A stretch of 64,000 bases of DNA from Octopus sinensis. Lineage: Eukaryota. The notes under the pieces were generated by a model, which had not been told where the DNA came from, did not search any database, and saw nothing but the letters and a program-made list of their open reading frames with translations. Of this stretch, positions 1,083 to 22,284 are shown piece after piece. Made by a program: the position numbers and the translations under genes. How positions within the stretch are numbered: position 1 is the first letter of the stretch; every line of letters begins with the position of its first letter. The DNA lies in NCBI RefSeq assembly GCF_006345805.1, contig NC_043011.1:33616464-33680463 (forward strand), written 5' to 3'.

Positions 1083-1218
1083 ATGAGACTGCTAATAACT
1101 CTTGCGATAATCTCGGTGGTAGTGATGGTATGTTGCAGTCATCCCATGGAAATGAGAAAAAAGAAAGACGGCGATGAGAAGGCAATGCCACTCAATACTG
1201 ACAGAAACAGCCATGCAG
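1083..1218 (+). CDS. Prohormone coding exon 1 (signal peptide MRLLITLAIISVVVMVCCS|HPMEM...SHA)
   Basis: ATG at 1083 in context aaacATG, basic residue plus hydrophobic core, donor GCAG|GTAACG at 1218/1219 (phase 1). Confidence 0.85.
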
Positions 1219-22200: not shown

Positions 22201-22284
22201 GTCATAATATAAATAAATATATTTATCTGTTTCATTGTTATATTTATTTTTTTCTTCTTCTTCCAGAGTTTCGCCGAAAAGTGA
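1083..22284 (+). CDS. Spliced gene model: secreted acidic neuropeptide prohormone (prohormone-2/NVP-like, granin-like), join(1083-1218,14879-15643,18474-19078,22267-22284), ~507 aa
   Basis: GT-AG introns with phases 1,1,0 join into one open frame (136+765+605+18=1524 nt). It has an N-terminal signal peptide, repeated KR/KK/RRRR sites and D/E/S-rich spacers. The family assignment rests on recalled motif similarity, not a search. Confidence 0.8.
1419..1650 (+). mobile_element. tRNA-derived SINE, family A (long-tail form), inside a (TATC)n tract
   Basis: Head ggcggcgagctggcagaaacgttagc (A-box-like) and gagttcaaattcc (B-box); the sequence recurs many times in the window. Confidence 0.85.
1671..2340 (+). 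mobile_element. 5'-truncated L1/Tx1-like LINE (ORF2 C-terminus plus 3' UTR)
   Basis: The translation ...LVAMAKECIWWTRL...FKYHLKRKVRVERQVLSSECFKKRW...LSIVL* resembles Tx1/L1 ORF2 C-termini (IW..R...ER..L...F..RW). A T/C-rich UTR ends in aataaagaaa. Confidence 0.65.
2434..3249 (+). mobile_element. Internally deleted Tc1/mariner (DD37D, maT-type) element
   Basis: TA-flanked imperfect TIRs (caggtacgatgagtaagt / atttattcaccgcaccctg) and degenerate transposase motifs MVFGVITSDDDVMPP, QQD..PCHTS, PPNSPDCNPL. It is homologous to 36751-38019 but lacks about 450 bp. Confidence 0.85.
4460..4745 (-). mobile_element. SINE family B 3' half, with an internal 16-bp tandem repeat (ggcactgccatgctgc x3, 4516-4568)
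   Basis: Reverse complement of the family B tail ggcggtgctccagcatggccgcagtc. Confidence 0.7.
4807..5019. mobile_element. Mariner-derived MITE
   Basis: TIR ggtgctggaaagttactggctct vs reverse complement of agagccaggaacttttcagcacc (21/23), flanked by TA. The internal sequence resembles a mariner 3' end. Confidence 0.8.
5560..5900 (+). mobile_element. Penelope-like element GIY-YIG endonuclease C-terminal relic
   Basis: Translation HLEIYGEGKFKIFPFCKC...FRKAMELHFIKIFSQELN fits the PLE pattern H...KFKIFPF...R..E..FI..F.P.LN. Confidence 0.65.
6581..7187. repeat. ~125-bp direct repeats (6581-6710, 7062-7187) flanking a hammerhead-containing core; PLE/retrozyme-like
   Basis: Near-identical blocks gataagatcgatatttaaataccgatcttatcagg...ggtatctaagagatacc. 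Confidence 0.8.
6823..6881 (-). ncRNA. Type I hammerhead ribozyme fold (partly decayed)
   Basis: Minus strand: AUUCCA-CUGAUGA-[stem II]-GAAA-UCC(G)GGA-UC-UGGAAU, giving a 6-bp stem I, intact core, short stem III and an AUC cleavage triplet. Stem II is imperfect. Confidence 0.6.
7610..8005 (-). mobile_element. SINE family B, full length, antisense in intron 1
   Basis: Matches the family B consensus seen at 45441 and 51374 (tRNA head, CORE-like ccttgggcaagtgtc, central CA/TG tract, tail). Confidence 0.85.
9425..10112 (-). mobile_element. SINE family B split by a Penelope fragment
   Basis: Head and core at 9973-10112, 3' part at 9425-9551, central region replaced. Confidence 0.8.
9552..9960 (-). 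mobile_element. Penelope-like element RT C-terminus/linker relic
   Basis: Minus-strand translation across frameshifts: VNRRVSKLS...ESLERSG...KRTII*FNAPYSLEVSTNVARSFL...KHISRGHEYYKLFNPYNIKARYSCLDN...CNCR. This matches the PLE motifs RKRxIIWFNPPYS..V.TN, KHFP..H...FN...K.SYSC and CNCR. Confidence 0.8.
10900..11465 (+). repeat. Decayed head-to-tail array of SINE A fragments
   Basis: Repeated gaggtc(g/a)actttgcctttcatc...gataaaataaagtacc units. Confidence 0.7.
11995..12187 (+). mobile_element. SINE family A (short-tail form)
   Basis: gttagcacaccgggcaaaatgcttag...gagttcaaattcc...ggccttgtatcaaagtttgaaac. Confidence 0.8.
12636..12890. mobile_element. hAT (Charlie-like) MITE
   Basis: Left end CAGTGGTTCTCAACC, degenerate right end ggttgagg, and internal ggatccata near both ends. 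Confidence 0.55.
14370..14800 (-). mobile_element. SINE family B, antisense, just upstream of exon 2
   Basis: Family B consensus on the minus strand. Confidence 0.85.
14879..15643 (+). CDS. Prohormone coding exon 2 (V-KR-AKEVLMFGNQQNSPRV-KK, then Ser/Asp/Glu-rich region)
   Basis: Acceptor tttttctctttgcAG|TG completes GTG with the phase-1 G of exon 1. The exon lies in the 257-aa ORF 14878-15651 and ends at donor AACG|GTGAGT (15643/15644, phase 1). Confidence 0.9.
15680..16140. repeat. Intronic (TCC/TCT) and (TCA)n low-complexity tract with higher-order repeat units; antisense reads as poly-Asp/Glu
   Basis: Repeated catcttcataatcatcatcat...ctccatcat blocks directly after the exon 2 donor. Confidence 0.9.
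17319..17448. mobile_element. Small MITE-like element
   Basis: Ends cagtagcgtagttaa / ttaaatgcgctactg form an imperfect TIR; no clear TSD. Confidence 0.4.
18474..19078 (+). CDS. Prohormone coding exon 3 (AEPIDVQRER...RRRR...KR...KR...KR-VFFPYSEEPRSHYSGLVGN-KR-SEPDEDVDYSRLLELARAL...)
   Basis: Long pyrimidine tract with tandem CAGCAG acceptor, in frame with exon 2 and with ORF 18554-19114. Donor GAT|GTAAGG at 19078/19079 (phase 0); read-through stop at 19112-19114. Confidence 0.88.
19931..20560 (+). mobile_element. Three head-to-tail SINE A copies; the last two are a 208-bp tandem duplication
   Basis: ORF-track hits at 20163 and 20371 are near-identical with offset 208 and share diagnostic variants (gaatttgcctacc, caatcaagg). 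Confidence 0.9.
21292..22143 (+). mobile_element. Mariner transposase 5' relic plus an inverted second 5' end (fold-back derivative)
   Basis: TA-CGAGG start; translation MSRTQVYEWFRCFQDGRKNVDIDERPGR...GMRRVPAKFVPRLIS (mariner HTH). 21908-22143 is an inverted copy of about 21335-21530 and encodes MTEEAEQRICIKFCQ. Confidence 0.85.
22267..22284 (+). CDS. Probable terminal coding exon (SFAEK*) followed by a long simple-repeat-rich 3' UTR
   Basis: Strong acceptor tatttatttttttcttcttcttccAG|AGT, phase 0 matching the exon 3 donor, TGA at 22282-22284. AATAAA at 22785-22790 is a possible polyA signal. Confidence 0.5.
   Translation, partial: SFAEK

What the first reader, a model, noticed from the sequence alone, without database searches (positions are those of the whole stretch)
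1083..22284. Cephalopod secreted acidic prohormone, candidate molluscan counterpart of insect prohormone-2/NVP-like precursors
Seen: four phase-compatible exons give a ~507-aa precursor with a signal peptide and about 7 di/tetrabasic sites. It has no repeated peptide cassette and no Gly-Lys/Arg amidation site before those cleavage sites. Knowledge (from memory, unverified): honeybee prohormone-2 carries KR-AQEMLMFGNQQN just after its signal peptide and later KR-NVPIYQEPRF-KR followed by an acidic/leucine helix. Inference: this locus keeps that architecture (KR-AKEVLMFGNQQN, KR-VFFPYSEEPR..., KR-SEPDEDVDYSRLLELARAL), suggesting a protostome-wide, poorly characterised neuropeptide/granin system.
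Basis: partly seen in the sequence, partly recalled or inferred. Interest (0 to 1): 0.85.

Follow-up and report, generated by a model that had tools for sequence, protein, structure and literature searches.

The report
Octopus GNXQN/prohormone-2 neuropeptide precursor gene

Summary
Four GT-AG exons on the + strand (1083-1218, 14879-15643, 18477-19078, 22267-22284) give a 506-aa protein. It is identical to an Octopus sinensis RefSeq model that is misnamed 'LEO1-like'. The protein has a signal peptide, 27% Asp+Glu, ten di- or tetrabasic sites, no Gly before any of them, and no repeated peptide.

A profile built from molluscs alone finds insect prohormone-2/NVP-like proteins at E 4e-7 against 1.8 billion proteins; shuffled controls reach at most 9.8 bits. 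A profile-profile alignment runs collinear from end to end (P 8e-16). The phase-1 intron inside the Val codon before KR-A.E..MFGNQQN is also present in an arthropod.

It is not new. The family is GNXQN (2013). Its homology to prohormone-2, and its presence in all mollusc classes except scaphopods, were published in 2019.

One correction. The insect NVP peptide and its helix align with the octopus middle block (RRRR-ELQDRSPRT-KR-GLYLSED...). The octopus VFFPYSEEPRSHYSGLVGN aligns instead with the insect YYP...KR...QWGGFA (baratin) region. That link is significant only through chelicerates.

Most likely function: convertases cut the precursor in dense-core vesicles into non-amidated peptides. 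No receptor is known.

The parts
1083..1218 (+). Exon 1. It holds the start codon, the signal peptide (aa 1-19, 1083-1139) and the propeptide HPMEMRKKKDGDEKAMPLNTDRNSHA. It ends in phase 1 (GCAG|gtaacg).
   Evidence: identical to P0001
14879..15643 (+). Exon 2. The Val codon is split by the phase-1 intron (G|TG). It is followed by KR, the GNXQN peptide AKEVLMFGNQQNSPRV (14887-14934), KK, and the Asp/Glu/Ser-rich spacer. The donor is AACG|gtgagt.
   Evidence: the N-block is invariant across the family; an arthropod contig has the same intron position and phase
15025..15408 (+). Poly-Asp/Glu/Ser core of the acidic spacer (aa 95-222). It is low-complexity, varies in length between species, and probably explains the 'LEO1-like' name.
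18477..19078 (+). Exon 3 (acceptor tttttcagcag|AACC). It holds the middle block NYIY-RRRR-ELQDRSPRT-KR-GLYLSED..., then ...GYGYD-KR, then ...GQPGYFIPA-KR, then VFFPYSEEPRSHYSGLVGN-KR, and then most of the C-terminal peptide.
   Evidence: the blocks are conserved in alignments A1, A3 and A6
18539..18583 (+). Middle-block cleavage cluster RRRR-ELQDRSPRT-KR. It aligns with mollusc KRSHRTKRDL and with insect ...NVPIYQEPRF/SIPYYQEPRY-KR-E.D.DPEDVL.LLSLWE.
18917..18973 (+). Predicted 19-residue peptide VFFPYSEEPRSHYSGLVGN, flanked by KR on both sides. It aligns with mollusc YFYPYSEEPQTHWGAFVP, chelicerate FFYPIDYRY..KR..(K/H)WG, and insect YYP...AQ-KR-..QWGGFA (baratin).
18980..19078 (+). The part of the C-terminal peptide that lies in exon 3: SEPDEDVDYSRLLELARALAVQRDGNAVAKDED. 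The predicted helix covers aa 473-494 (18992-19057).
   Evidence: AlphaFold2 predicts a helix at fragment residues 153-174 with pLDDT about 76 in an otherwise disordered model; the Y..L..LA.AL motif is conserved family-wide
22267..22284 (+). Exon 4, encoding SFAEK plus the TGA stop (acceptor cttcttccag|AG).
   Evidence: it is needed to reproduce P0001 exactly; the Argonauta orthologue ends ...IPSEK

Best explanation
The locus is the Octopus (sinensis/vulgaris group) orthologue of the protostome GNXQN / prohormone-2 / NVP-like (baratin) precursor gene.

Shown here:
- It is a four-exon gene for a 506-aa protein that starts with a hydrophobic, signal-peptide-like N-terminus, judged by eye.
- It has three conserved blocks in the same order as in other molluscs, annelids, chelicerates, a millipede and insects.
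- The first block is the N-block, KR-A.E..MFGNQQN.
- The second block is the middle block, R(R)RR ... R-x-K-R-[DG]-L.
- The third block is the C-block, G.PGYF.P.KR ... FYP..EP..H(W/Y)(G/S).. KR ... Y..L..LA.AL.
- Between the first two blocks lies a fast-evolving acidic spacer.

Inferred from what is established for this family and for prohormone processing in general:
- The protein enters the regulated secretory pathway of neurons and neuroendocrine cells.
- Furin/PC2-type convertases cut it at the conserved KR, RRRR and RTKR sites, and a carboxypeptidase trims the basic residues.
- The products are non-amidated peptides: AKEVLMFGNQQNSPRV, VFFPYSEEPRSHYSGLVGN, a helical C-terminal peptide, and acidic spacer peptides.
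- These peptides would act as neuromodulators through a receptor that has not been identified.
For: Gene model and identity to the RefSeq protein.

Orthologues in Argonauta, other cephalopods, Solemya, Tegillarca, Potamilus, Sinanodonta, Patella and Mya.

The exhaustive HMM search found 137 proteins at E<=1e-3. They include 'NVP-containing protein' of Carausius, 'prohormone-2(-like)' of Periplaneta, Monomorium, Vespula, Copidosoma and Prorops, and proteins of Limulus, a millipede and the annelid Owenia.

The mollusc-only profile scored insects at up to 46 bits (E 4e-7 at Z=1.8e9). The best of 5000 shuffled decoys scored 9.8 bits.

hhalign of lophotrochozoans against insects gave P 8e-16, collinear over the full length. 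With the N-block removed, P was 1.3e-4 against insects and 6e-6 against chelicerates, while reversed-sequence controls gave 0.6 and 0.3.

The phase-1 intron splits the Val codon before KR in octopus (G|TG) and in an arthropod contig (G|TC).

A cephalopod orthologue (P0003) sits as one uninterrupted ORF on a 1548-nt run-assembly contig, which shows that the homologous exons are joined in mRNA.

No Gly precedes any basic site, and the pI is 4.2.

Literature:
- GNXQN peptides were detected by mass spectrometry in Platynereis (PMC3890597), scallop (PMC5996578), oyster (PMC8398477) and a nemertean (PMC8557429).
- The transcript is used as a neuronal marker in oyster and flatworm larvae (10.1101/2023.01.04.522730).
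- Baratin is a non-amidated neurostimulating peptide that comes from the NVP-like precursor (PMC4237046, PMC6585902, PMC12604039).
Against: The arthropod hits of the mollusc-only profile get most of their score from the short N-block.

The C-block link between molluscs and insects is not significant when tested directly (P 0.015-0.18). It rests on chelicerates as intermediates.

The octopus peptide has HYSGL where other molluscs have HWGAF, so the Trp shared with baratin is missing.
Confidence: 0.85

Rival explanations
1. The protein is mainly a granin-like helper of the regulated secretory pathway rather than a ligand precursor. In that role the acidic, calcium-binding, aggregating protein would drive dense-core granule formation or sorting, with the C-terminal helix as the sorting element. 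The peptides found by mass spectrometry would then be by-products.
For: The protein has 27% Asp+Glu, a pI of 4.2 and a long disordered acidic spacer. It has a conserved C-terminal helix. In oyster and flatworm larvae the transcript is used as a general neuronal marker and is co-expressed with 7B2 (10.1101/2023.01.04.522730). None of the papers found here names a receptor for any member of the family.
Against: The best-conserved parts are short peptides bounded by dibasic sites, not the acidic region, which is barely alignable. Baratin from the insect orthologue has reported neurostimulating activity (cited in PMC4237046 and PMC13478068). There is no match to the Pfam granin family or to any other Pfam family. 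The two roles do not exclude each other.
Confidence: 0.2
2. One reading: octopus KR-VFFPYSEEPR... is the counterpart of insect KR-NVPIYQEPRF, and SEPDEDVDYSRLLELARAL is the counterpart of the insect helix that follows it.
For: By eye, P-x-Y-x-E-P-R is shared by FPYSEEPR and VPIYQEPR, and both are followed by KR and an acidic Leu-rich stretch. One hemipteran middle-block helix aligned weakly (5 bits) to the lophotrochozoan C-terminal helix profile.
Against: Both insects and molluscs have both blocks, in the same order. The collinear profile alignment pairs the insect NVP/KRDL.LDPED block with the mollusc RTKRDL block, and it pairs the insect YYP..KR..QWGGF..LAQLL block with the mollusc FYP..HWGAF..LARAL block. 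Bivalve HRTKRDLLAPEEERALLEYLE matches insect RLKRDLGLDPEDVLTVLSLWE directly.
Confidence: 0.08
3. The protein is what RefSeq calls it: a relative of the RNA polymerase-associated protein LEO1, a nuclear subunit of the Paf1 complex.
For: The only support is the source name of P0001, which probably comes from similarity between acidic low-complexity regions.
Against: The N-terminus is a signal peptide. No Pfam family matches at E<=1, including the Leo1 domain. All relatives found are neuropeptide precursors.
Confidence: 0.01

Closest known systems
GNXQN (GNQQNxP) proneuropeptides of lophotrochozoans (Platynereis, oyster, scallop, gastropods, nemerteans, brachiopods)
   Same: It shares the signal peptide, the KR-A.E.IMFGNQQN.P..KKSD N-block, the acidic spacer, the RTKR[DG]L middle block, and the G.PGYF.P.KR ... 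FYPYSEEP.. KR ... LA.AL C-block. It is non-amidated and non-repetitive.
   Different: Cephalopods lack the extra 'Q.LSFVPG.KR' peptide that sits between GYF.P.KR and FYPYSEEP in bivalves, gastropods and annelids. They have HYSGLV instead of HWGAFV. They have a cephalopod-specific LVSLDSWPNAYSQSELLEKEAPYQI segment. Octopus also has an unusually long poly-Asp/Glu tract.
Insect prohormone-2 / NVP-like / baratin precursor (Apis NVPIYQEPRF precursor; cockroach baratin DNSQWGGFA)
   Same: It shares the N-block (KRAQE.LMFGNQQN), a phase-1 intron at the same codon, the middle block R.KR[DE]L, and the C-block with an aromatic-Gly peptide followed by KR and an ...LA.LL... tail. It has the same three-block order and the same lack of amidation.
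   Different: Outside the N-block the similarity is very low. The insect peptides NVPIYQEPRF and baratin have no close sequence counterpart in octopus. In insects the mollusc FYP...HWGAF peptide is split by an extra KR. Insects end in ...P.YRR..L, which molluscs lack. The acidic spacer is much shorter in insects.
Vertebrate granins (chromogranins, secretogranins)
   Same: They are also acidic, disordered, secreted proteins with multiple dibasic sites that are processed into non-amidated peptides and are broadly neuroendocrine. This is resemblance only.
   Different: No sequence relationship was detected. There was no Pfam match, and none of the taxa identified among the hits of the exhaustive search is a deuterostome; only some of the hits were named.

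Membership tests
GNXQN / prohormone-2 (NVP-like, baratin) precursor family | GN[QHR]QN motif close to the N-terminus, directly after a dibasic site (PMC6425005) | tested here: met
   KR47-AKEVLMFGNQQNSPRV-KK. The GNQQN residues are invariant in alignment A4.
GNXQN / prohormone-2 (NVP-like, baratin) precursor family | N-terminal signal peptide, that is, a secreted precursor | tested here: met
   The hydrophobic N-terminus MRLLITLAIISVVVMVCCS aligns with the signal peptides of family members. No dedicated signal-peptide predictor was available.
GNXQN / prohormone-2 (NVP-like, baratin) precursor family | Statistically significant sequence relationship to named family members from insects | tested here: met
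   The mollusc-only HMM scored insects at up to 46 bits (E 4e-7 at Z=1.8e9), against a decoy maximum of 9.8 bits. hhalign gave P 8e-16.
GNXQN / prohormone-2 (NVP-like, baratin) precursor family | Similarity extends beyond the N-terminal motif: collinear middle and C-terminal blocks | tested here: met
   With the N-block removed, P was 1.3e-4 against insects and 6e-6 against chelicerates, and the reversed controls were not significant. For the C-block alone, P was 1.5e-4 against chelicerates, 2e-5 between chelicerates and insects, and not significant directly against insects.
GNXQN / prohormone-2 (NVP-like, baratin) precursor family | Shared gene structure: intron immediately before the V-KR-A.E codons | tested here: met
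   The intron is phase 1 and splits the Val codon in octopus (G|TG) and in arthropod contig L001 (G|TC). Only one arthropod contig was examined.
GNXQN / prohormone-2 (NVP-like, baratin) precursor family | Non-amidated, non-repetitive peptides released at dibasic sites | tested here: met
   No Gly precedes any of the 10 basic sites, and there is no repeated cassette. Actual cleavage was not tested.
GNXQN / prohormone-2 (NVP-like, baratin) precursor family | Neuronal or neuroendocrine expression, and peptides detectable by mass spectrometry | not testable with these tools
   This is shown for other species only (PMC3890597, PMC5996578, PMC8398477, PMC8557429, PMC12604039).
LEO1 / Paf1-complex subunit (the RefSeq name of the identical protein) | Leo1-like domain; nuclear protein without a signal peptide | tested here: not met
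   No Pfam family matches at E<=1, a signal peptide is present, and the homologues are neuropeptide precursors.
Granin family (chromogranin/secretogranin) | Match to the granin sequence family | tested here: not met
   There is no Pfam match. Only the composition and the dibasic-site pattern resemble granins.

The most novel reading that the evidence does not exclude
The whole precursor, not just the GNXQN motif, is collinear across Protostomia. On this reading the octopus 19-residue peptide VFFPYSEEPRSHYSGLVGN (mollusc YFYPYSEEPxTHWGAFVP) is the lophotrochozoan counterpart of the insect 'YYP...-KR-..QWGGFA' pair, and so of baratin. The insect NVP peptide would belong to the middle block.

This would make baratin-type signalling ancestral to protostomes. 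It would also point to one specific conserved peptide to test on orphan receptors in cephalopods. I did not find this block-by-block correspondence stated in the papers I could search.
Probability: 0.55. Interest if true: 0.4.

Novelty: already known. Interest (0 to 1): 0.2.

Why it matters
The main value is better annotation. A RefSeq protein called 'RNA polymerase-associated protein LEO1-like' is in fact the octopus GNXQN/prohormone-2 proneuropeptide. Anyone mining cephalopod single-cell or brain data by gene name would miss it.

The family is a broadly neuronal, protostome-wide precursor for which none of the papers found here names a receptor. A correct three-block map shows which octopus peptide corresponds to which insect peptide, including baratin. 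That map narrows the set of peptides worth synthesising for receptor screens and antibodies. The family, its presence in molluscs and its link to insects are already published, so there is no conceptual surprise here.

Tried and rejected
1. My first gene model used the internal acceptor cctttcag|AAG at 18599/18600. It gave 465 aa. I rejected it because P0001 and all cephalopod orthologues contain the 41 extra residues, including RRRR and RTKR, and the true acceptor is at 18476/18477.
2. Full-length and N+C profile word-index searches found molluscs only. The N-block-only search added a spider and many single-exon fragments, but no named insect prohormone-2.
One call also failed because max_evalue was set above 10.
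4. Pfam gave no family for the octopus, Patella or Mya proteins.
5. Searching the supplementary files of PMC6425005 for the motif found nothing, because the stored files are truncated. I therefore could not confirm that an octopus sequence is in their dataset. The statement that cephalopods are covered rests on their main text.
6. A C-block-only HMM against arthropods was weak. The best score was 10.8 bits, exceeded by 1 of 9135 decoys. Direct C-block hhalign of lophotrochozoans against insects was not significant.
7. The look-up of encoding contigs has no record for P0001, so the wider octopus genomic context could not be examined.
8. The AlphaFold2 model is mostly low-confidence (pLDDT 60), so I did not run a fold search.
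9. Rfam and tRNA scans of the window found nothing.
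Full report
**What is in the sequence.** The window is AT-rich, microsatellite-laden animal DNA. On the + strand four open segments join through canonical splice sites:
- 1083-1218, donor GCAG|gtaacg;
- 14879-15643, acceptor tctctttgcag|TG and donor AACG|gtgagt;
- 18477-19078, acceptor tttttcagcag|AACC and donor GAT|gtaagg;
- 22267-22284, acceptor cttcttccag|AG, with TGA at 22282-22284.

The intron phases are 1, 1 and 0. The coding sequence is 1521 nt and gives 506 aa. 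I first chose an internal AG at 18599, which gave 465 aa. The database search corrected me: the 506-aa product is residue-for-residue identical to an NCBI Octopus sinensis protein named 'RNA polymerase-associated protein LEO1-like isoform X2'.

**Properties of the protein.** It starts with a hydrophobic signal sequence (MRLLITLAIISVVVMVCCS). It is 27% Asp+Glu with a pI of 4.2. It carries ten di- or tetrabasic sites: RKKK25, KR47, KK65, KK141, KK229, RRRR322, KR335, KR393, KR446 and KR467. None of them is preceded by Gly, so no amidation is expected. There is no repeated peptide cassette. An AlphaFold2 model of the last 186 residues is mostly disordered (mean pLDDT 60). It has one longer helix over residues 473-494, EDVDYSRLLELARALAVQRDGN. 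Pfam finds nothing, including no Leo1 and no granin domain.

**Evidence that the exons are really joined.** The identical RefSeq model is one line of evidence. Other lines come from related species:
- A 90-aa protein 94% identical to the octopus N-terminus spans the exon 1/2 junction (P0017).
- A cephalopod orthologue (P0003, 416 aa) sits as one uninterrupted ORF on a 1548-nt contig assembled from a public sequencing run. For a gene that spans 21 kb with three introns in octopus, this means the contig comes from mRNA.
- The Argonauta orthologue ends ...IPSEK, which matches the tiny last exon SFAEK.

I could not map octopus RNA-seq reads.

**Relatives.** Word-index searches found orthologues in Argonauta, two other cephalopods, and the bivalves and gastropod Solemya, Tegillarca, Potamilus, Sinanodonta, Mya and Patella. 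An exhaustive HMM search of 1.84 billion representative proteins found 137 proteins at E<=1e-3 and 64 at E<=1e-10. The source names of a sample of those hits include:
- 'NVP-containing protein' of Carausius morosus;
- 'prohormone-2(-like)' of Periplaneta americana, Monomorium pharaonis, Vespula, Copidosoma and Prorops;
- uncharacterised proteins of Limulus, of the millipede Chamberlinius and of the annelid Owenia.

That profile contained some short N-terminal fragments that are probably from arthropods. I therefore repeated the test with a profile made only from ten mollusc sequences. Insect proteins still scored up to 46 bits (E 4e-7 when scaled to 1.8e9 sequences), whereas 5000 shuffled versions of the same arthropod proteins never exceeded 9.8 bits.

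**What carries the signal, and how far the similarity goes.** Most of the score lies in the N-block: the signal peptide plus KR-A.E..MFGNQQN. A profile-profile alignment of 29 lophotrochozoan against 14 insect sequences is collinear from the first to the last column (P 8e-16). After the N-block was removed from every sequence, the remainders still aligned in order. P was 1.3e-4 against insects and 6e-6 against chelicerates, and reversed-sequence controls gave 0.6 and 0.3. For the last ~90 residues alone, three comparisons were made:
- lophotrochozoans against chelicerates, P 1.5e-4;
- chelicerates against insects, P 2e-5;
- lophotrochozoans directly against insects, not significant (P 0.015-0.18).

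The C-terminal homology between octopus and insects is therefore transitive and rests on chelicerates as intermediates.

An independent character supports orthology. In octopus the intron before the N-block is phase 1 and splits the Val codon that precedes KR (G|TG AAA AGA). An arthropod contig has a phase-1 intron at exactly the same codon (AAA G|gt...ag|TC AAG AGA).

**Which peptide corresponds to which.** All taxa have three blocks in the same order.
1. N-block: KR-A.E..MFGNQQN.
2. Middle block. This is octopus YRRRR-ELQDRSPRT-KR-GLYLSEDSQ.... It corresponds to bivalve KRSHRT-KR-DLLAPEEERALLEYLE, spider RRSMRL-KR-QVDVEDLLNLFE, cockroach SRSRL-KR-DLGLDPEDVLTVLSLWE, and ant KR-SIPYYQEPRY-KR-ELDINPDDVLTLLSLWE.
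3. C-block. This is octopus KR-VFFPYSEEPRSHYSGLVGN-KR-...DYSRLLELARALAV. It corresponds to bivalve KR-DQYFYPYSEEPQTHWGAFIPS-KR-DYTDSYANLVRLARRLAV, spider KR-SSPFFYPIDYRY...KR...FGKWGHV...IARLYGLANLLS, and cockroach GGYYYP...YPAQ-KR-DSSQWGGFAKD-KR-FMVSRKR...VQTLAQLLN.

So the honeybee-type NVP peptide and the helix after it belong to the middle block. The octopus VFFPY... peptide corresponds to the insect segment that contains baratin (DNSQWGGFA; PMC12604039, PMC6585902, PMC4237046).

That pairing is attractive by eye because both share P.Y.EPR. In the profile comparisons it appears only as a second, insignificant alignment (P 0.7-0.8). It would also leave the insect baratin block and the octopus RTKR block without partners.

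**What is already known.**
- GNXQN proneuropeptides were defined in Platynereis, with mass-spectrometry support and with mollusc orthologues (PMC3890597).
- De Oliveira et al. 2019 clustered GNXQN with insect prohormone-2. They described the shared N-terminal GN[QHR]QN motif, extended the family to all mollusc classes except Scaphopoda, and concluded that it dates back to the protostome ancestor (PMC6425005).
- Later papers use the name 'prohormone 2/GNxQN' for nemerteans and brachiopods, with peptides confirmed by mass spectrometry (PMC8557429).
- Cragi-GNQQN has been characterised in oyster (PMC8398477).
- Scallop GNQQNxP was confirmed by mass spectrometry and is highly expressed in the eye (PMC5996578).
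- The transcript serves as a general neuronal marker in oyster and flatworm larvae.

What I did not find in the papers I could search is the block-by-block correspondence beyond the N-terminal motif. [quoted passage not shown]

**Likely mode of action.** Shown here: the protein is a signal-peptide-bearing, disordered, acidic precursor whose conserved parts are short segments bounded by conserved KR, RRRR and RTKR sites. Inferred from the family and from general prohormone biology:
- it is sorted into dense-core vesicles;
- furin/PC2-type convertases cut it and a carboxypeptidase trims the ends;
- non-amidated peptides are released.

The strongest candidates for bioactive peptides are AKEVLMFGNQQNSPRV, whose core is invariant from octopus to insects, and VFFPYSEEPRSHYSGLVGN. 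None of the papers found here names a receptor. A granin-like role in granule formation is a reasonable rival or an additional function. The composition, the broad neuronal expression in other species and the conserved C-terminal helix all fit it.

**Verdict.** This is a real gene, correctly delimited and correctly interpreted at family level, but it belongs to an already described family. The useful outputs are the corrected name for a misannotated RefSeq protein, the corrected peptide register relative to insects, and the shared intron. Interest is low.

Noticed in passing
window 21532-22059 (+), inside intron 3: A 175-aa ORF (MQKAYGEKCMSRTQVYEWFRCFQDGRKNVDIDERPGRH...) looks like the N-terminal part of a mariner/Mos1-type transposase. 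Pfam HTH_48 matches only weakly (E 0.0012, 19 bits, below the 24-bit cut-off). It is probably a decayed transposon copy.
   Followed up: partly
window 2660-2815 (+, intron 1) and 37378-37779 (+): Two ORFs share the segment MVFGVITSD..VMPPFIFP.G.RLN...YI.CLEE.VLL, so they look like copies of one interspersed repeat, possibly a transposase fragment. Pfam gave no match.
   Followed up: partly
window 15840-16135 (intron 2, just after exon 2): A (TCA/TCT)n-type trinucleotide array (period 21-48, about 300 nt) would encode poly-Asp/Glu on the minus strand (ORF 15812-16180, minus strand). It is the reverse complement of the GAT/GAA-rich repeats that encode the acidic tract of exon 2, and it lies directly beside that exon.
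   Followed up: partly
window 18599/18600, inside exon 3: An in-frame internal acceptor (tacctttcag|AAG) would remove 41 residues, including the RRRR and RTKR cleavage sites. No homologue supports its use. RefSeq calls the identical protein 'isoform X2', so other isoforms exist, but I could not see them.
   Followed up: partly
window 46804-47102 (+): Long pure (GAA)64 and (GAT)21 trinucleotide arrays produce a 173-aa poly-Glu/Asp ORF (46660-47181) and a local GC-skew peak. This appears to be simple sequence rather than a gene.
   Followed up: partly
window 22300-64000: No other convincing gene was seen. All ORFs of 110 aa or more are microsatellite or low-complexity translations or repeat fragments, and there are no tRNA or Rfam hits on either strand. 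Exon-level homology searches of this part were not done.
   Followed up: partly
related proteins P0020, P0021, P0023-P0027 and locus L001: Many database 'proteins' that hit the N-block are prokaryote-style ORF calls on arthropod genomic contigs. They read through the intron into the exon that begins with VKRAQE.... They are therefore chimeras of intron and exon, not real proteins.
   Followed up: yes
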